From the NCBI RefSeq assembly GCF_964204865.1, contig NC_135263.1, positions 12,400,001-12,464,000 on the forward strand: a DNA stretch of 64,000 nt. Direction: 5' to 3'. The position numbers and the translations under genes were made by a program. The notes under the pieces are model-generated. The model saw only the letters and a program-made list of their open reading frames with translations. It was not told the DNA's origin and ran no database searches. The DNA is from Styela clava (lineage: Eukaryota). This document shows positions 28,190-38,527 of the stretch, piece after piece. Every line of letters starts with the position of its first letter. Positions within the stretch are counted from its first letter, which is position 1.

Positions 28190-28777
28190 CTCTATATAAT
28201 TATAGAGGGTCAACATAGAGATACCACCTCTGTGTGACGTCATAGTTCCGCATGAGTAAAGAGGTATGACCTTCTCAGCGCTTAACTTTGCCGCCAAATA
28301 TTTTGACCGAAGTTTTTTTGTTGCCCCAAGCTGCGGGCATTTTTAAGTTATTTTGTAACGCTTCGTATATATATATATGAGTAGATTAGCTCTAAAAATC
28401 ACGCTAGCTTTCGTTTCGATGCGATATTTATGTCACAGACTGTGAACTTGACCTAACACGGTACGATAACCTGGCACCGGTAAGGTAACTGCTGAACTGA
28501 CAGCAGTAGCAATAATATTATTCAGATATTGCTATTTCATTTTCGGTAATTTTGCTTTCAGGCCCGTACCACAGTATTGTAGACAACTTAGCTCTAATCT
28601 ATCTACCGGTACATATAGTTCTAATCGTAGGTACCGTACTTGCACAGGAATCCTTTATTTCAACTTATGTGAAGAGAGAACACAGTTTGGAGAAGCAAAC
28701 CAAGTATTTGTGGTATCGATACGTGAGTATTGTTATATACAGATATATATATTAAGTGATTTAAATATTTTTTTACT

Positions 28778-31700
28778 ATGCCAGCTGGAACGCATTGTGC
28801 AGTGCCGGGATGCAGCTACTCCTATGTCAAGTCTAGGAAAGCAGGACAGTCTGTAAAAACACTATTTTCTGTTCTTCGGCCCGATCTGGCAAAGACTCCT
28901 CAGGAAAGGAAACACCGGGAGGGGTTGTCCAATTTTTTATTGGCGATGAGAGACAGTAGCAGAGGAGATAACATCAAGGCTATGCTGCACAAAGAAACGT
29001 AATATACTTATCTAGGCATACTAAACATATAAACAAATTTATACAGCCTATAATAGTATATTTGAGTAATTGCGTTCAAAAATTCTGCTGTGTGGATTAT
29101 CAGAAACCCGGAATATTTGTTAATTTTTCCAATCGTATATTTATCGTTATAATTTGCTAAGCCTACCAAGCCATCTAATTTGTTTTGCATTTAATTCAAG
29201 TTTTGCACAAAATGACCATAGCTAGCTTTTGACATCTTCATATTGTTATACCAATATACTTTACCTTTTTATATTTAGGGCCTCAATATGTGAAGACCTT
29301 TTCCTGGGAACCGATATACTTCGGCATCGGAAAAAAAGCTCTTTAAGACTCGGAGCAGTTCCATGCAGAAATATTCCCAGGAGTTCAGCTGTGTACCAGG
29401 AAAAAAACAAGACCTCTCCCAGCTGTGCGTGAACCACTGCCGGAAAAAATTCGATATCGATCTACTAGGAGTTTGGTCAGTGCCACTTCATACTTGTCGC
29501 AATCTATGAAAGGTATGCATCTGTAGAATTTTTTTTTGCTTGTTAAGCAAATTTTGATTGAACTTTTTATACAGATAAGTGGGCTTTGTATGAGCACCGA
29601 GGAAAATTTATTGCAGAGATGAGAAAGGATGATTACTGCGTGCCTAGTATAAGGTAGTTGTTTTTAAACAGAAGTTATCAATTATAGTTTGGTTTTCAAC
29701 TTGCAGAGAATAGGATAACATGTTAGTTTTCAATTATTTTGTTGCTGTGTCATTTGAGTAGTAATTGAGTTTGACAGCATGAATTGTAAGTTCAGCAGTT
29801 TTTCATTGTAGCGCACGTTTTTAGATAGCAGAATATTAAAACTCATACTAGGAGGCTACAGGATTGTACAGAGTAAATAGCTAAGATAAATTGCAAATAC
29901 CAAATCACAAATATACCCATGAGCCATATGACATACCAAATTGTATCTAACAACTTATCAATCTAAAACAAACTGAAATAATTTTACACAATGATGAAAA
30001 AAGAGTTGAGTATGGAGAAGATGGTGCAATGCAAAGTGCTCATTTTTCTGGCTGGAAAGTCGAGATTGCAAAGCTAGGATTTGACAGATGTGATACTCTG
30101 AATTCTGTTTTAGGTATACATTTTCTTTTGACAAGTTCACCTTTGTTTTATTCTGTAACTCAAATTTGTGTTATCCATTTAAGACAAATTAGGCAAATTG
30201 GAGTTGTGTTGCGGTATTGATCGGCGGGATGGCAGTACATTGGTTCACCCAGTTTTGTCGTGGGGAGGTGACAAAATTAATATCAAAAATATATATCGGT
30301 CAACATCATGTAGCACAATTGGTATGTTAGTAAAAAATCGCTGTTCGACTGTCTCGAGAGCATATATATGATTGCAGGATATTTTTAGTGGATGTGTCAA
30401 TTGGATGCCCAATGTGCAGCAGCTGCATGTCAGAACAGTTCAAAAATGACGAGGAAGAACACCATCCAAGCCAGGTCATGTTGCAAGTTGATGATACTGT
30501 GCATGATATGATCAAGGTCATGTTTACTTTTTGTTTCATTTCACGATCAAATAATTTTTAATGTACTAGACTCAAGAGATTAATTGTATGACTGACTTGT
30601 GAATATTTTCACAGGCCACTTTCGCTTCTGAAAGTTCCATCTTGAATACTTGGCAGCAAATGTTTTTTGGTCAGCAGCTTGCCAACTCCAATGCTCACCC
30701 CTCTTCACGTCGGTACCATCCAGATGTGATTCGTTGGGCTATGGAACTCTATTGCAGATCGCCTTCTGCCTATGATCATCTGCGAACAAGTCAGGTGCTG
30801 ACTCTCCCTTCCCCAAGCACTTTGAATCGCTACAGGTAAATGTAATGCTTCTGACAATTGTTGGGGTGTACTATGGTGAATTTAAATTAACTTTGATAAC
30901 CATTCGGCCATGTTGTTTTCTTTCAGTCTATTTAAAAAAAATATTTTGTCTATTATCTGTCTACTTATTATATCATACATTGGTCAGGGACTTGCGATTG
31001 CTGATTTATTTTTTATTTTTGCAGAAATGTCATTCCACCACAATCTGGGATTAACAAACTGGCATTGAAAGAAATGGAGAGAGTCATCAAAGACAAGGGT
31101 TAATTGATTGGATTTGTTGCTCTCGGTGAGATGAAGGGTAAGCTCACTTAAATTTTTATTTACAATCTTACATCATTGTCATATATATGAATCTCTGATA
31201 CAGTTAGAGAAAATCTGGTCTGTCGTAACGGCAAATTGATTGGTTTCGTGGACAAAGAAATGGCAATAATGACCAGCTTGCTTCACACATTTTAGGTAAG
31301 TTGTTACTGGGGTTTTACTACGGTAGACTTTTTATGTAACGCAGTATTAATGTTCTACATGTTTCTTCAGTATTCTACGTTAGAACCGTGAAGCGAGATC
31401 TGTCGATTCCTTTGGCGTGGTATGCAACCCGTAACTCCCCAGCCTCCAAGCTTTGTCGGGTGTTTTGGGAACTTTTAATTGAATGTGAGAGCCGAAGCGT
31501 AAAGATCCTTGCTGTAATCGCAGATGGTCACAGTACCAACCGCCGCTTTTTCCAACTTTTAAGTGGCAACTTGGAATTGCCTTGTGATGGTGTATTGTTT
31601 GCTCCTAATATATGCGACTCTGACAGGAACATATACCTATGTTCTGATCCATCACATTTGATCAAGGTAATAAAAGAAATGGGCAAATGGCATTGTATAA

Positions 31701-34696
31701 TGTTTACCATGATGCGTTAATTTTCAACAGTCTTTTTTTCATTTGTTCAGACTGTTCGAAACTCGTTATATGCATCAAAAGTTGGTGGGAAGAAGCATAT
31801 GCGCCGAGGTGGCCAGGACATTGTGTGGAGGCATATTAAAGATCTTTATATGCAGGAATCTGTTCAGGTCCTTGGCCATACCAGACTGAGTCCATCACAT
31901 GTAGAGTTAACACCATATAGTAAGGTAAGCTAATAGTCTAATTGTGTTGGTTTGGCCGCACGACACGCTGATGAAATCCCTGAAATGGACTTATTTCAAC
32001 TAAAATTTTTGATTCGCTGCCAATGCCCTTGACTGTGGTAACAGGATTTTCAATAACTAATTTTTTTTAATACAGAGTGATTTGGGAAAATCTTTTTTAT
32101 TTTCAGATGAAAGTCAATCTTGCAACTGATGTGCTGAGCTGGAACGTCGGCCAATGTTTAAAATCAATGAATGGGACGAATGGAACTGCCAAATTTGTTT
32201 TGATGTTTGCAAAGTAAGTCGGTCATTTTTTAAAAGAAAAAAAATTCCCTATTTTTGTGTCAGTTATGCATGTATCGTCCATTCAGATGGTATGAAATTG
32301 TCAACTGTTCCTGTAATTGCCCCATACGATGCGTCGACGATAATAGGCTGTCTTGGTTGAAGAATGACTTCATAGGTTCACTGTTGGAGTGGGAAGTGAG
32401 TTGTATTTTTTGTGCGATTTTATTCAATATGATCACAATCTCTAAAAAGATCTACAACCATAGCATTTGAAGATTATATTGTATTCATTATGCCCTAACA
32501 TTGTAAAAGAGAGATGTCATTTTGGGGTTGGCTATTGTTATTTTCATGCATTATTTATTCTTGAAAACAATTATAGAATGAGCATGGTGGAGATGAAAAG
32601 AGTTTTCTGGCTCGCCCAACCTTAGAGGGACTGAAATTCACCACACACAATTTCATAGAGATGTGAAATTACCTTCTGGCAAATGGTTTGGAATATGTGT
32701 CTTTGCACTGCTTTAATCAGGATGTTTTGGAAGCTTTCTTCGGAAATTTGGTGAGATTTTTTGGGGGGCTGAACTGTATGGGTATCTATCTAGCCATGTA
32801 TATATCTAATCCGCAGCATCACATTCATAGAGACAACTTGGATCTAGATCAAGCAATCCAGACATATCTCAAGTATTCTATGGAATAACCCAAATTTCGC
32901 AAAGTAAGATCATCAAGAAGGTCAAAGGTGGTAATACAACCTATGGGAAAGCGAATGCCTGGACAGACATATGTGTCAAGTCAAGTCAAGTCAAGTTTAT
33001 TTTTTCCAACCAGTAAAAAACAAGAAACACATGCAAAAATATATAGAAAAAATGATATTTAAATTACTGGGGAAGGGAAGCCGCGGGGAACCAAAACTGG
33101 TTATCGAGCTGCGACACCCAAGGTTCTAACACCTAGTTTGACAGATCGGGGAGAAGAGTTTCAACAAATAGATACCATATAAATTTTACTAGAGAGCTAA
33201 CTAATTGCAATTGTTATATATTATTACTAAAAATTACCGTGCATTAAATGTGCCATAATAGCAGCGATAACGGGGGATTTCCCGTTTGCATAGACCTAGC
33301 TGTAGCGAAATGTTGTTCTGTAGAATAACTGGGGAATTTTGAAGGTGACCTGACCACAACGTGGTTGTGCTATGAAGCGATATAGCAATGGACACCGATC
33401 AGGTAAATAAATAAAGTGAAATTAGCACGCTGGATGTTGAAATAAATATTCACCATTGGTGTCCTGACGCGTTATCTCAGTACCGGTACCGTACTGCTTG
33501 TAAGCTAACAAGAAAAATATTAGGAACAAATATAAATGATATGATACTGTCAGACTGTGATAAGAATACAATGAAAAAACAATATTGACATTTGTTGAGG
33601 TGAAAATATATGTTGGTATAAAATCACTAGACTATGGAGTCCTTCAATGATAGAAATATCTGAATATAGGAAGCACTGTGATAGGAATACTCCATTGCTT
33701 AAACTGGTACCGGTACCGTAAGTTGATGTTAACTAATACTAAAATATGAAACATAATTAGTAATACTTTTTCATGTAACATAGCACAATTAATAGTTTTT
33801 GTCCATCCTAAAGTATATATTGAGACACTAAATGTCTTTTTAGATTTGATTTGAATATCTGGTGGGACATGCTTTTTAACTCACTTGGTAAATTGTTCCA
33901 CATTTTTGCTCCAGTGTACTTTAGGCAATTTTGGGTTATGGAATGTGACAAACGACGTAAATAAAAAGAGTGTGTGGAGGCTGATCTTGTGTTATGTGTG
34001 TGTATAGTACTTTGTCGTATAAAATAACCATCAAAAGCACTTGGTAGACAATGGTTGTGATATTTGTGCATAAGCTTGCAGATCTCTAATTTATAAATAT
34101 CTGCAAGCTTTAAAACATTAATTTTGTTATAAATTATGTTAAGATTTATGCGAGCAGACGAACGATAAAGGATTTTAACCGCCCTGTTCTGAAGTACATT
34201 AATTCGATGCAAAATTGATTGAGATGCGGATCCCCAAGCTACAATAGCATATTGGATATATGTTTGAAAAAGTGAGAAATATACCAATTTAAGGGTTGCT
34301 GTATCTATATAGTGTTGAAGTTTACCTAACATACCTACAGTTCGAGAAAGTTTTTTACGAATATCATTAACATGGACATCCCAACGTAAGCAGTTATCTA
34401 TATTTAGTCCTAGATATTTGTAAGAAGGGACAGATTCTATCTCTGTTCCATTGATGTTAATAGAAATTGCGGTGACTTGATGACGTTGTTTAGGGCATAT
34501 ATGAACAATTTTAGATTTATTAATATTGATTGTTAGCTTGTTGCTAATCATCCATTCGAATACCTTTGCCATCTCGATATTTACATGTTTTTCTAAGGTC
34601 AACACAGATTTCGCACTGTCCAGAAGACCGGTGTCATCTGCGAACAATTTTGTCAAGAGGTCAGACTGTGAACATCCATTGCCATCAAAAAAATGA
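28778..34696 (+). pseudogene. Multi-exon THAP-domain P-element/THAP9-like transposase, inactivated
   Basis: THAP: CAVPGC..ICEDLF..LRLGAVP. HTH: RRYHPDVIRWAMELYCRSPSAYDHLR..LPSPSTL. Core: ALGEMK (first Asp changed to Gly), VIADG, SDPSHLIKTVRNSL, KMKVNLA, FNQDVLEAFFGNLRQ. Frameshifts, a TGA at ~32664, and a LINE inserted in the last exon. Confidence 0.88.
32976..34666 (-). mobile_element. 5'-truncated LINE (CR1/L2-group-like) inserted in the transposase last exon
   Basis: ORF 34656-33808 is an RT C-terminus (SDLLTKLFADDT..YKYLGL.ID..LRW..H). It has a long 3' UTR, AATAAA and a (CTTGA)4 tail, with TGTG repeated at both junctions. Confidence 0.9.
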
Positions 34697-35362
34697 ACAT
34701 TAGCATAATTTCGGCTGCAATCATGACTTACGATATTTAGAATATGCAGATTATGCTTTTTCTCTTATAATATCGTGGATTGTTGCCGTAAAATCAATAT
34801 TGGTCTTTTGTTCGAAACATTTGACCATACACACAAGGCTTTGGAGTCGGAAGTCCAACATTTTTTTATATCGTAGCTGTGCGCAAAATTTGGTTGAATT
34901 AATCAGAGTCAAATTTTTATCGTAATATCCCATTCAAATTTTTCTAAAAAACTAAGCATTGAATTGACTAGAGTATTTTCAATAGATAATTAAATTCAGT
35001 AAGACTCAATAAAGTTTTTGTAAAAGTTTGGTTTGTTGTAGCCTGTTTCGAACTCTTCGTCAAATTTGAATTATGGTCTAAATTTACTGGACTTCACAGC
35101 CTGCTCGGAAACTTATTAGTGCTGTTTTATAATAGCATGGCAATCAAATAACAAGTTTGGATGGCAGAAGATTGAAGTGGATGATGCAGTTTATTGCCTG
35201 GTGTATTTGAGACTTTGTGTATTTTAGTCGAATCAAATTTAATTGGGTGCTTTTTGTTTGGTACATAAGAGAAACACTGAGATAACCCGGCCCATACAAT
35301 AATTAAACAATAGACTCAATCAAGTACCTCAAGCTTTTTATTTTAGCAGTTACTAAAAAAAA

Positions 35363-36278
35363 TTAATTGAAAATATGACTGTTGCTGATTCTTGCCAAAT
35401 CTGGTTTAGTACCTCTAGAACAGACACCAGACCCCGGGGCCCTCTTTTTGAATAATTTGTAAAACAACATTCTTGCATATGCATGTGAAAGCACTCTTAT
35501 AAATAAACTTGTTACATATCTTGCTATCTTGACACTTTCTTTGTGTCCATTGCAATAGGGTAGCATGTCATTGGTATCAAAGTTTTGAGACTCTTCTAAC
35601 TTATTTTCAATTCCTGCAAATAAGATGTGGCTGTTTAGCACATTCCTGCGCTACTTTTTGGTAAGCCCCTTCTAATAGTAACAAGTATGCTTGAGTTGGA
35701 TAATTTAGCTTTCCCTCCGGGAACTGCAGTAATGGGATTGTTGAATGGGAGGGCCTTTTTGCACAGAGACAGTCCAGGGCTTTTGCTGATTCTGCAAATT
35801 TAATATACCCTTTTTTCAGGGTATATCCTGCAATGTACTCAATTATGCCTTTTTCATAACTGTCGACCTGTTCGCAAAATAAATTCTTCGGGGTGGCAAA
35901 TGTTACATTGTCATCCAGTGGCTTGAGAATGTAGTTGGTTATTTCCAACATGGCTTTCGCTGTAAAAAAATTTTCCGTATGCCCAGCGAACATCTTTGGC
36001 GAGAGGTGTGAGCATTGAGAGAATTTTAGCATGAATTGGTCAGCTCCTTTCTCTCTGGCAAAGACTTGCATGAGGGCTTTTATAATATTCAAGCCTTCAA
36101 ATGTTAGCTCTAAGTCGGATCTTACGTTATTGACTAATTTTATAACTTGATCATCGGAAACTTCCGGAGTTCTTCTATTTTTTACTTGTGTTGATGCTTT
36201 CGAATGAGGAAATTCTACGATTTTATTGAAATCCTCGAAAAGGAACTCAACAATTCCATGTATCTCGTTAGTAGCCAT
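35363..36278 (-). pseudogene. Second transposon gene resembling the P-transposase C-terminal domain; one frameshift near 35620
   Basis: ORFs 36278-35607 and 35641-35363 join to give IIEYIAGYTLKK..CLC..GKLNYPT..C.GH..LFIRVLSH, matching the YIAGY..GGL.YP..R pattern of P/THAP9 C-termini. Lies inside the TIRs. Confidence 0.7.
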
Positions 36279-36586
36279 TACAGATGAATAACAGTAAGTA
36301 AGATAACTTATAAGTTACTGAGTAATAATCTAGAGATAGGCTGGGTATGTGAAAAATAATTAATTACAGAGATTGTGCAAATTGACAATCTAAACGTGGT
36401 AATGCTTTTGACTTTTAATTAATCAACACTCCTTTTTTTTCTCACTAATTAGGCTATGTGGCTGATTTCAGACAGATAACGGTTTTAGCATCGATTTAGT
36501 ATGAGAATAAATGGTAAGATAGCAGTCCAATAAAAATAGAGTAAAATACAGTGGTTTTCAATCGCAGAGGCCAATACAATATTGAT

Positions 36587-36912
36587 AGAGAGAGAGAGAG
36601 AGAATTTATTGTTTCGTCAAACCAGAAAACACATACAATATATATATGATAGCAAAATGAGTAAAATTAGATTTCGGTAGATGACAGGGTGGTAACGATA
36701 CGACCATTAACAGTCATCTGAGTCGGTTACCACCCAAAGCAAGCACATGAATAAATAAATTAATAACACAGGTTCTGTAATATTACACTCTCAGGATATA
36801 CAGTAAAGAAACATATTTAATAATTCTGAAAGCAAACTACCGAATCATGACCCTGAACTGATGGATTGGCTGGATACGAACCCGCGACATCTTGACACTA
36901 AACGGCCAACGC
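36587..36912 (-). mobile_element. SINE-like insertion with (TC)n tail nested in the P element
   Basis: (GA)n run at 36587-36603. The 3' part resembles 58098-58260. B-box-like GGTTCGTATCC on the minus strand near 36880. Confidence 0.5.
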
Positions 36913-38527
36913 TGAAATAGATCGCGCTGAGAAAAACATCGCAATTCCTACTTCCGTACCTCTTTACTCATGTGGAACGACCTTTGAACCCGCGAGTGAA
37001 TTCTCTATTATCATTCTCTGTGATATAATATAAAGGCTTCCGTCCCTTTACACAACTCGATGTGAAGTAGGCAAACAAAATTATTTATCTCCATATTGGT
37101 GTACACGCTTCTGGAGCGTCAAAAATACAGCCAGCCAACAAAAAGACAGATCAACAAGATGTTGGTGGAAAATCTATGATGGGTCATTCACGTTTTTTGC
37201 ACCACTCGCTGTCAGAAAATGTTACACACACCTAACCGGAGCATTGTAAATCGATCTCTTGCACAAAGCCAAACCTTGGGACTATGGTAATAAACTGGAG
37301 CCTCTCAAAAATACAGTTTTTAACAAGAGCTCCTACAGAATGAGAGATTTTCCATAGAGTTCGCCGGTGATCTACTGGTACATTCGAGTATGATAAGAAT
37401 TCCTATTTATCATTGTAAAAATTTGATGATTCAACCTACTATAAGCAACTCGTGTAAAACTAGGTGTTTTGAGACTATATGTTTTTCTTTCTGTATCCAA
37501 CTATATTGAAACTAATCGACTCGGAAGTAGTACTTTATTGACATGTTAATTTATGCAATAACAAATTATTGGTACAGACTGAAAATTATCATTTGGGGCA
37601 AAATAGTACAAAGGAATATCACAAATTCACTTAATCTCTGAAATTTAATTGATCACTTTACACGTCTTTTTGATAAGACGGTAGCAAAACATAAGGCAAT
37701 AATAGCAAGCTACTTCTAAGCAACAATGAAACACCGATTTATCAAATTATTAATCAAAAACCATCAAAAAAGTAAGAATATAAAAATAGAAGTAAAAATG
37801 ACGAGTATATAATTTCTAGCATGAATCTGCTAATCTTAATAAAAATGCAAAAGGCTACTTCAAAAGATGACAAAGAAATAAAATAAGCCTGACTTAGTAC
37901 GTAGATCAAGAATAAAGAAATTGGAATGCCAAAACCAGATACACCACGCAAGGTAGGCAACAATGATAACTTACATTAAAGAGATACAATCTCTTAATTA
38001 TCAAAATAATGATAAAATCCTTGCTAATAATAGAAATCAAAGTATTCCAGATGATAAAAATCCATTGACAAGCTGTTTTAGTAATAATGATAACTAATAA
38101 GGATAGTCGCCATTTACTATTCACTAACACTGTTCAACTAGGATTTAGATTTTGTATTTAGCATTCTTCTGCTGGTATTAACAAAATTTGGATGTATGCA
38201 CTCAGGTCACTGTATTGGTTCAAACATTTAACTAAGTGTTTTTCACTTTCAGCATACAAACATGATTGAACATTTGAAAGAAGTATGCATAAAAACAAAT
38301 GTACCGGTAATTGTTACGGAAATTTTCAAGATAATAACATTTCAAGTAAAAGGCGACACCATGCTAGTACAAACATTTTAATCAAAATCGAATGGAAGTC
38401 AAGAAATTTAGGTAGTATATGATTATGATGTAAAATGATCCAGTTACTATATCACTTATCTCTGAATAAATGGAAAATAAATGCAAAGAAATGAATGTGG
38501 CAGAGGCTTAGTCTTCGATCACCAATG

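What the first reader, a model, noticed from the sequence alone, without database searches (positions are those of the whole stretch)
28201..37022. Bipartite P-element: transposase apparently split into a THAP+DDE gene and a convergent gene for the C-terminal domain
Seen in sequence: one element, bounded by matched inverted ends and a 7-bp TSD (ATATAAT), carries two tail-to-tail genes. Gene 1 is intron-rich and encodes THAP, HTH and DDE core. With the LINE removed, it ends about 55 aa after the catalytic Glu (..GNTTYGKANAWTDICEHPLPSKK*). Gene 2 (36278-35363, no coding intron, ~300 aa) has EYIAGY..K..C.C..GKLNYP..LFIR. Established: Drosophila P transposase and THAP9 carry this YIAGY-type C-terminal domain in the same chain, after the RNase H fold. 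Inference: this is a two-subunit P transposase produced by gene fission, each half probably transcribed inward from one end, with a new ~140-aa N-terminus on gene 2. I know of no description of this layout but cannot rule out a Repbase entry.
Basis: partly seen in the sequence, partly recalled or inferred. Interest (0 to 1): 0.85.

Follow-up and report, generated by a model that had tools for sequence, protein, structure and literature searches.

The report
Two-gene P transposon, end domain split off
This is a dead copy of a young P-type jumping gene that encodes its cutting enzyme in two facing genes, the second carrying the DNA-contacting end domain that known P transposases have fused on. 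That offers a natural test of what the domain does.

Summary
Window 28201-37022 is one copy of a ~6.95-kb P-superfamily DNA transposon. The same ends and a 7-bp target duplication recur in six copies.

- **Window copy:** dead. It has a LINE fragment in gene 1's last exon, a 208-bp insertion, a 10-bp exon deletion, and 6+5-bp deletions in gene 2. Five other copies are nearly identical to each other.
- **Gene 1:** intron-rich, with THAP, HTH, RNase H (D, D, E) and the GTP-binding insertion. It stops 62 residues after the catalytic Glu, inside what is the linker in fused P transposases.
- **Gene 2:** convergent, intronless, 308 aa. Residues 136-282 are the P transposase C-terminal domain (CTD): hhalign E 1e-5 against fused P transposases of the same genome, and Z 9.0 to Drosophila transposase 617-734, the best of 48,161 chains.
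- **Gene 2 N-terminal half:** a conserved helical domain, not a private novelty. All 29 database relatives are stand-alone proteins of 106-331 aa, the fuller ones near 300 aa.
- **Layout:** the short transposase tail and the facing gene recur in two sequenced divergent lineages of this genome (partly in three more loci), and by coordinates in two more.

That the two products assemble into one transposase is an inference. Expression, interaction and necessity were not testable.

The parts
28194..28200 (.). Left target-site duplication, ATATAAT
   Evidence: Identical 7-mer at 37023-37029. Five other copies have their own 7-bp duplications.
28201..28266 (+). Left end: terminal TATAGAG, ATAGAGA at 28215-28221, and a 22-nt subterminal inverted repeat at 28245-28266 (a likely transposase binding site; inferred)
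   Evidence: The same end is found in 6 copies.
28778..34696 (+). Gene 1: intron-rich P transposase without the C-terminal domain. Broken in this copy.
   Evidence: Approximate exon cores: THAP 28778-28999 and ~29274-29400; HTH 30603-30836; first Asp ~31005-31187; 31191-31336 (10-bp deletion); RNase H N part with second Asp 31340-31717; GTP-binding insertion 31721-31930 and 32071-32214; 32234-32467; catalytic Glu exon 32577-32754; last exon 32831-32975 plus 34667-34696. Pfam PF12017, PF21787, PF21788 and weak THAP. Mapping to an intact copy. Only the last intron's splice sites were read.
32976..34666 (-). Nested non-LTR retrotransposon fragment (reverse transcriptase C-part) inside the last exon of gene 1
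   Evidence: Absent from all other copies. Weak RVT_1 match. (TCAAG)n tail and TGTG duplicated at the junctions.
35363..36278 (-). Gene 2: stand-alone protein (308 aa when intact) made of an N-terminal helical domain plus the P transposase C-terminal domain. Frameshifted here by 6+5-bp deletions.
36589..36796 (.). 208-bp SINE-like insertion private to this copy
   Evidence: Absent from all other copies. Sequence.
36957..37022 (-). Right end: 22-nt subterminal inverted repeat at 36957-36978, terminal ...CTCTGTG
37023..37029 (.). Right target-site duplication, ATATAAT

Best explanation
**Shown.** The region is a decayed copy of a recently active, low-copy P-superfamily cut-and-paste transposon of ~6.95 kb with a 7-bp target duplication. 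Its transposase coding capacity is divided between two convergent genes inside one pair of ends.
- Gene 1 encodes the THAP DNA-binding domain, HTH, RNase H catalytic core (D, D, E) and GTP-binding insertion. It stops in the region that forms the flexible linker of single-chain P transposases.
- Gene 2 encodes a conserved ~130-aa helical N-terminal domain followed by the all-helical C-terminal domain of P transposases.

**Inferred.** The gene 2 protein joins the gene 1 protein in the transpososome and supplies in trans the domain that contacts transposon and target DNA in Drosophila. Its added N-terminal domain and gene 1's conserved short tail would replace the covalent linker as the attachment. 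Transposition would then need both genes to be expressed, giving a two-key control comparable to the Drosophila switch between the 87-kDa transposase and the 66-kDa form lacking the C-terminal third. The layout most likely arose by inversion of the 3' part of a single-gene ancestor.
For: **The element is real.** Ends and 7-bp TSD recur in 6 copies. Five copies are nearly identical, and four (other than the window's) encode the identical 308-aa gene 2 protein, so transposition was recent.

**Gene 1 is a P transposase.** It matches PF12017, PF21787, PF21788 and, weakly, THAP. The D, D and E motifs are present and collinear with fused P transposases as far as '...KVKGGN'. It stops about 20 aa later.

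**The short tail is conserved.** The tail exon is the best-conserved exon (62-66% identity) in three other divergent loci, L044, L045 and L046. Between lineages only exon fragments align at DNA level, which indicates purifying selection.

**Gene 2 carries the CTD.** See hhalign, Pfam PF12596 in 9 of 16 family members, and the structural match to 6p5a_B at Z 9.0, top of 48,161 chains.

**The two halves are complementary.** Against fused P0032, gene 1 covers up to ~744 and gene 2 covers 765-872.

**The convergent layout recurs.**
- L044 and L045 hold the full exon set facing a gene 2 homologue.
- L043 and L047 show it partly.
- C18:4.78 Mb and C19:15.77 Mb show it by coordinates only.

**No fused relatives of gene 2 were found.** All 29 database relatives are stand-alone proteins of 106-331 aa, the fuller ones near 300 aa; several align over nearly the whole query.

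**Published structure makes a split plausible** (review PMC7776569).
- The Drosophila CTD hangs on a flexible, disordered linker.
- It contacts transposon and target DNA.
- Only the full-length 87-kDa protein transposes; the 66-kDa form lacking the C-terminal third is a repressor.
Against: - There is no evidence of expression, splicing, interaction or requirement.
- The gene 2 query itself has no Pfam hit, no PDB sequence hit, and a Foldseek E-value of only 0.3.
- Z 9.0 is within the range that helical domains can reach by chance, according to the tool's own note. The case rests on three concordant weak-to-moderate signals.
- Within the young family, variation is neutral and mostly private to the window copy.
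- Two paralogous gene 2 copies, L042 and L043, evolve at dN/dS 0.73, so no selection is visible at short range.
- Gene 2 diverges much faster than gene 1 between lineages (~26% versus 42-66% identity).
- One pair of loci (C5:17.02 and 17.04 Mb) has the two genes on the same strand.
- The genomic context of relatives in other organisms could not be seen.
Confidence: 0.6

Rival explanations
1. Gene 2 is a regulator rather than a subunit. On this reading the detached CTD-derived protein modulates transposition (inhibitor, chaperone, nuclear import or target-choice factor), while the gene 1 protein is catalytically self-sufficient in this clade.
For: - Gene 2 evolves much faster than gene 1.
- It carries an extra conserved N-terminal domain of unknown role.
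- Second ORFs of other DNA transposons have accessory roles, for example the Myb-like protein of PIF/Harbinger (own knowledge).
Against: - In Drosophila the form lacking the C-terminal third is inactive, and the CTD contacts both DNAs (PMC7776569).
- The break lies exactly in the linker, and the two halves add up to a full enzyme.
Confidence: 0.22
2. The family is non-autonomous. Gene 1 is a truncated, inactive transposase, gene 2 is a relic, and the copies are moved by a complete P transposase encoded elsewhere, for example the single-ORF 813-833-aa family in the same genome.
For: - A standard P/THAP9-like family with long open frames and ~99% identical copies coexists in this genome.
- Copy number of the split family is low.
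Against: - The truncated tail and the facing gene are kept in the divergent lineages L044 and L045, and the tail also in L046, with exon-only DNA conservation. Relics would not be maintained this way.
- The standard family's left end and fetched sequence lack the split family's termini and 22-mer. This is a weak test, because its right end was not seen.
Confidence: 0.08
3. The resemblance of gene 2 to the P CTD is convergent or a generic helical bundle. Gene 2 would then be an unrelated passenger gene.
For: - There is no significant single-sequence hit.
- The Foldseek E-value is 0.3.
- Helical folds give middling Z scores by chance, as the tool's note says.
Against: - Three independent kinds of evidence point to the same domain in the same order of elements: profile-profile comparison, Pfam hits across many members, and the top structural match covering 114 of 118 residues.
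- The YIAGY helix and the 'G.L.YPS' hairpin align.
- The position is complementary to gene 1's truncation.
Confidence: 0.05

Closest known systems
Drosophila P element transposase and THAP9-type single-chain P transposases (PDB 6P5A; Pfam PF05485, PF12017, PF21787, PF21788, PF21789, PF12596/PF22824)
   Same: - The same domains occur in the same order: THAP, HTH, RNase H with D, D, E, the GTP-binding insertion, and a helical CTD with the YIAGY helix.
- The target duplication is 7-8 bp.
- Inverted repeats are subterminal, internal to the termini.
   Different: - The CTD is on a separate polypeptide encoded on the opposite strand.
- It is preceded by an extra ~130-aa domain and lacks the CxxC that follows YIAGF in the fused forms.
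- The transposase gene has about ten introns.
- The termini are barely inverted.
Drosophila 66-kDa P repressor (retention of intron IVS3)
   Same: It is a transposase form that keeps DNA binding but lacks the C-terminal third. Presence or absence of the C-terminal part decides activity (PMC7776569).
   Different: In Drosophila the switch is alternative splicing of one gene. Here the C-terminal part is a separate gene with, presumably, its own promoter.
Two-gene DNA transposons: ProtoRAG/Transib-type RAG1-like plus RAG2-like (tail-to-tail), PIF/Harbinger (transposase plus Myb-like protein), ISL2EU (THAP-DDE plus exonuclease)
   Same: Two genes lie inside one pair of ends and both are presumed to be needed. 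ProtoRAG shares the convergent orientation (own knowledge).
   Different: In those elements the second protein is not a detached domain of the transposase itself. Here it is homologous to a domain that relatives have fused.

Membership tests
P superfamily of DNA transposons | Transposase with an N-terminal THAP zinc finger | tested here: met
   The C-x4-C ... C-x2-H pattern is split over two exons. Pfam THAP scores only E 0.062 on the second exon. Both exons are conserved at 36-71% identity in two other lineages.
P superfamily of DNA transposons | P-type HTH and an RNase H core interrupted by the GTP-binding insertion domain | tested here: met
   PF12017 E 1.5e-6, PF21787 E 6e-7, PF21788 E 0.006-0.06 on single exons. 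PF21789 is weak (E 0.093), but the QDxLExFF motif aligns to fused P transposases.
P superfamily of DNA transposons | 7-8-bp target-site duplication and terminal or subterminal inverted repeats | tested here: met
   A 7-bp TSD in 6 of 6 copies. 1360 and Galileo also make 7 bp (PMC3698922). A 22-nt subterminal inverted repeat is present, but the termini themselves are imperfect.
P superfamily of DNA transposons | One polypeptide carrying the C-terminal domain after the RNase H fold | tested here: not met
   Gene 1 stops 62 aa after the catalytic Glu in the intact copy. In L044, L045 and L046 the homologous tail exon ends at about the same place; a nearby stop was read in L044, but L045 stays open for at least 10 more codons. 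The only CTD coding is on the minus strand. This is the variant feature.
P transposase C-terminal domain (PF12596 Tnp_P_element_C / PF22824 THAP9_C) | Sequence match to the family model | tested here: inconclusive
   The query itself has no hit. Of 16 family members, 9 match PF12596 at E <= 1 (best 1e-5) and 1 matches PF22824. Paralogue L042 scores E 0.011, below the cut-off. hhalign to fused transposases gives Prob 82%, E 1e-5.
P transposase C-terminal domain (PF12596 Tnp_P_element_C / PF22824 THAP9_C) | Same fold as the solved CTD (6P5A residues 617-734) | tested here: met
   AF2 model with pLDDT 82. Z 9.0, rmsd 2.6 A, 114 of 118 residues aligned. It is the only chain with Z >= 8 among 48,161; the next is Z 6.6.
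Heteromeric (two-subunit) transposase | Both genes lie inside the ends and are intact in recently moved copies | tested here: met
   L031 and L033 have gene 2 intact, and all homology-supported gene 1 exon segments are open in L031. The spliced gene 1 product was not assembled.
Heteromeric (two-subunit) transposase | Both expressed, physically associated, and both required for transposition | not testable with these tools
No multimer prediction is offered.

The most novel reading that the evidence does not exclude
A clade of P transposons, present in several lineages of this genome and (unverified) possibly in other organisms, uses an obligate two-protein transposase. The DNA-contacting C-terminal domain was cut off at the flexible linker and moved to the opposite strand. 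It gained a docking domain and is delivered in trans, so transposition is gated by co-expression of two convergently transcribed genes.
Probability: 0.5. Interest if true: 0.8.

Novelty: new variant of a known kind. Interest (0 to 1): 0.7.

Why it matters
P transposase is a model eukaryotic transposase, and the role of its C-terminal domain is known only from one cryo-EM structure and from the inactive 66-kDa form. A natural version with that domain on a separate protein would show three things:

- that the domain can work in trans;
- where the enzyme tolerates a break;
- a ready-made two-component (split) system for controlling transposition experimentally.

It would also add the P superfamily to the short list of eukaryotic DNA transposons with two required genes. 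In the papers searched I found no description of such a layout. Repbase and Dfam could not be consulted.

Tried and rejected
**Searches that gave nothing useful**
- Pfam on gene 2: no hit.
- PF12596 against the whole genome: no match.
- PDB sequence search with gene 2 and with two gene 1 exons: only noise.
- Foldseek alone: E 0.3 for 6p5a_B, though prob 0.90.
- N-terminal domain of gene 2: no match to fused P transposases (hhalign Prob 0.2%). ESM Atlas scores were under 0.8. The best structural Z was about 6, to generic four-helix bundles.
- The search for homologous proteins: one fused relative and almost nothing with the family profile.
- Metagenome scan: the first try had no usable pattern and the second found no relative.

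**Analyses that failed or were uninformative**
- Control model of the fused CTD of this genome's standard P family: failed at pLDDT 38, so the Z scale has no calibration.
- Selection tests: within-family variation is neutral. L042 versus L043 gives dN/dS 0.73, so there is no sign of domestication.

The C18:4.78 Mb and C19:15.77 Mb loci are therefore judged by coordinates only.
- Kimbacher et al. 2009 on Ciona P elements is not held.

The joined spliced protein was neither built nor searched.
Full report
**1. What is there**

Window 28201-37022 is one insertion of a DNA transposon. When the element was compared with eight other genomic places that hold gene 2, the similarity started and stopped at exactly 28201 and 37022 in four of them (L031, L034, L035, L036); L033 matches through both ends and a few flanking bases because its target duplication resembles the window's. 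Each of the six copies examined is flanked by its own 7-bp direct duplication.

An undisturbed copy is 6,933-6,949 bp. The window copy is longer because it holds a 1,691-bp antisense non-LTR retrotransposon fragment (32976-34666) and a 208-bp insertion (36589-36796). It also has small deletions that break both genes.

The ends are poor inverted repeats:
- 5 of 7 terminal bases match;
- a shared ATAGAGA lies at nt 15-21;
- a 21/22 inverted repeat lies 45-66 nt from each end.

The family has roughly a dozen to twenty copies. Five copies are almost identical to each other, and the window copy differs from them by about 2%, mostly through private changes. The family therefore moved recently, and the window copy is an older, dead member.

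**2. Gene 1**

Searched exon by exon on the intact copy L031, the plus strand matches several P transposase models:

| Model | E-value |
|---|---|
| PF12017, P-type HTH | 1.5e-6 |
| PF21787, RNase H N part | 6e-7 |
| PF21788, GTP-binding insertion (two exons) | 0.006 and 0.06 |
| THAP | 0.06 (weak) |

Translated comparison with fused P transposases shows the three catalytic motifs. These transposases were the 833-aa ORF of L039 in the same genome and the 967-aa P0032. Collinearity continues through '...FFGNL | RQLGSRSSNPD...KVKGGN' against '...FFAAVRARGGWNNNPT...KVKNGN'. The last intron has a GTGAGA donor and a CATAG acceptor in phase.

The protein then ends after about 20 more residues, 62 residues past the catalytic Glu. 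The only CTD-like coding found anywhere in the element by translated search is on the minus strand.

Only the last intron's borders were read, and the other exon limits given are approximate.

**3. Gene 2**

In L031, L033, L034 and the chromosome-3 copy the minus-strand ORF is 308 aa and identical. Taken alone it hits nothing in Pfam or in PDB sequences.

A full HMMER pass over 1.84 billion representatives found 29 relatives (12 at E <= 1e-10). All are stand-alone proteins of 106-331 aa. The best align from about residue 9 to about residue 283; many others match only the C-terminal half or part of it. Gene 2 therefore belongs to an old family of free-standing ~300-aa proteins, and the N-terminal half is part of that family.

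Three lines of evidence tie residues ~131-285 to the P transposase C-terminal domain:
- **Pfam.** 9 of 16 family members match PF12596 at E <= 1 (best 1e-5), and one matches PF22824. A paralogue in this genome scores 0.011.
- **Profile comparison.** The family profile aligns to residues 660-781 of the fused 833-aa transposases with Prob 82% and E 1e-5, covering the YIAGY/YIAGF helix and the 'G.L.YPS' hairpin.
- **Structure.** An AlphaFold model (pLDDT 82) superposes residues 136-282 on chain B of 6P5A, which is Drosophila transposase residues 617-734. The match has Z 9.0 and rmsd 2.6 A over 114 of 118 residues. In an exhaustive comparison with 48,161 chains it is the only one with Z >= 8; the next is 6.6.

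Each line alone is moderate. Together, and given the position, I take the homology as established.

The N-terminal part is an acidic helix followed by a confident four-helix bundle (residues 40-120). It has no specific relative.

**4. The two halves fit together**

Against P0032, gene 1 covers up to about residue 744 and gene 2 covers 765-872. Against L039, gene 1 reaches about residue 611 and gene 2 starts at 660.

The break therefore falls in the segment between the RNase H fold and the CTD. In the Drosophila structure this segment is a flexible, disordered linker. [quoted passage not shown] A domain that already works at a distance on a loose tether is a plausible candidate for delivery as a separate protein.

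**5. The layout is conserved, not an accident of one family**

Two other loci, L044 on contig 5 and L045 on contig 4, hold a gene 2 homologue (24-27% identity). It is faced by a P transposase gene with the same exon set (36-75% identity), including the short tail exon. That exon is among the best conserved, at 62-66%. L043, L046 and L047 show parts of this arrangement.

Between lineages only exon fragments align at DNA level, which is the signature of long-term purifying selection on gene 1, including its truncated end.

A profile search of the genome found more gene 2-like frames. Two of them face a P transposase on the opposite strand, judged by coordinates only because the DNA could no longer be fetched:
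- C18:4779514-4779813, facing a 402-aa open frame that holds both RNase H motifs;
- C19:15771900-15772496.

By contrast, the standard P family of this genome has the CTD fused (PF22824) in the 813-833-aa ORFs read, and no gene 2 hit lies near its listed copies. Its left end and fetched sequence do not share the split family's termini.

**6. How it most likely works**

Shown: two convergent genes inside one pair of ends, one encoding the catalytic and DNA-recognition modules, the other encoding the CTD plus an extra domain. Both are intact in young copies, and the arrangement is kept in the divergent lineages L044 and L045.

Inferred: the proteins assemble, with the CTD supplied in trans. Gene 2's N-terminal domain and gene 1's conserved tail would serve as the joint. 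Transposition would then depend on both genes being on.

In Drosophila only the full-length 87-kDa protein is active, and the form lacking the C-terminal third represses (PMC7776569). By analogy, gene 1 alone may be inactive or even inhibitory. An inversion of the 3' part of a single-gene ancestor is the simplest origin. The direction (fission rather than fusion) rests on fused forms being the only ones described (PMC7776569, PMC3698922) and was not tested by a rooted tree.

**7. Weak points**
- Short-range selection tests are uninformative.
- One duplicated locus has the two genes on the same strand.
- The structural Z score is not far above what helical domains can reach by chance, and my positive control failed.

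**8. Comparison and novelty**

The element meets the P-superfamily criteria except the single-chain architecture. I file it as a new variant of a known kind.

Searches of the held literature found P-like elements reported in Ciona and many animals, but no two-gene P element. Repbase and Dfam, and the 2009 Ciona paper, were out of reach.

That is not independent evidence, and I tested the claims myself. Another note names the organism as the sea squirt Styela clava, which I did not verify.

Noticed in passing
window 32976-34666 (-): A non-LTR retrotransposon 3' fragment (282-aa RT C-part ORF at 33808-34656) with a (TCAAG)n tail, nested in the last exon of gene 1. TGTG is duplicated at the junctions.
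   Followed up: partly
window 36589-36796: A 208-bp insertion private to this copy. It begins with (AG)n and contains a short hairpin, and looks SINE-like. Its family was not identified.
   Followed up: no
L039:2017-4518 (+), also L040 and L041 (contigs 9, 13, 10): A standard single-ORF P/THAP9-like transposon family with 737-833-aa ORFs in the three copies read. The fetched copies L039-L041 are 98-99% identical; one search lists about 8 near-full RNaseH_N hits of this type. It matches HTH, RNase H, GBD and THAP9_C, but no THAP match was seen in the ORF as listed. It may be currently active.
   Followed up: partly
L042:7060-8430 (+): A 456-aa ORF with DUF4371 (hAT-like or ZMYM-type transposase relative), 1.7 kb downstream of a gene 2 paralogue.
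   Followed up: no
G000 C5:17020819-17021217 (+) with 17023929-17024105 (+); duplicate at 17040433 and 17043543: A gene 2-like frame and a P RNase H exon on the same strand, 3 kb apart, in a ~19.6-kb duplicated segment. This is the one exception to the convergent layout and is unexplained.
   Followed up: no
L042:4473-5372 and L043:4504-5391: Two open gene 2 paralogues (299 and 295 aa, ~97% identical DNA). The transposase partner is not detected beside L042 and only its two THAP exons are detected beside L043. dN/dS is 0.73, so they are probably decaying copies rather than domesticated genes.
   Followed up: yes
TSDs of six copies: Four of the six target duplications read GTTnnnS (GTTTGAG, GTTTGAC, GTTGGTC, GTTTCAC), which hints at a target preference. 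The sample is too small to judge.
   Followed up: no
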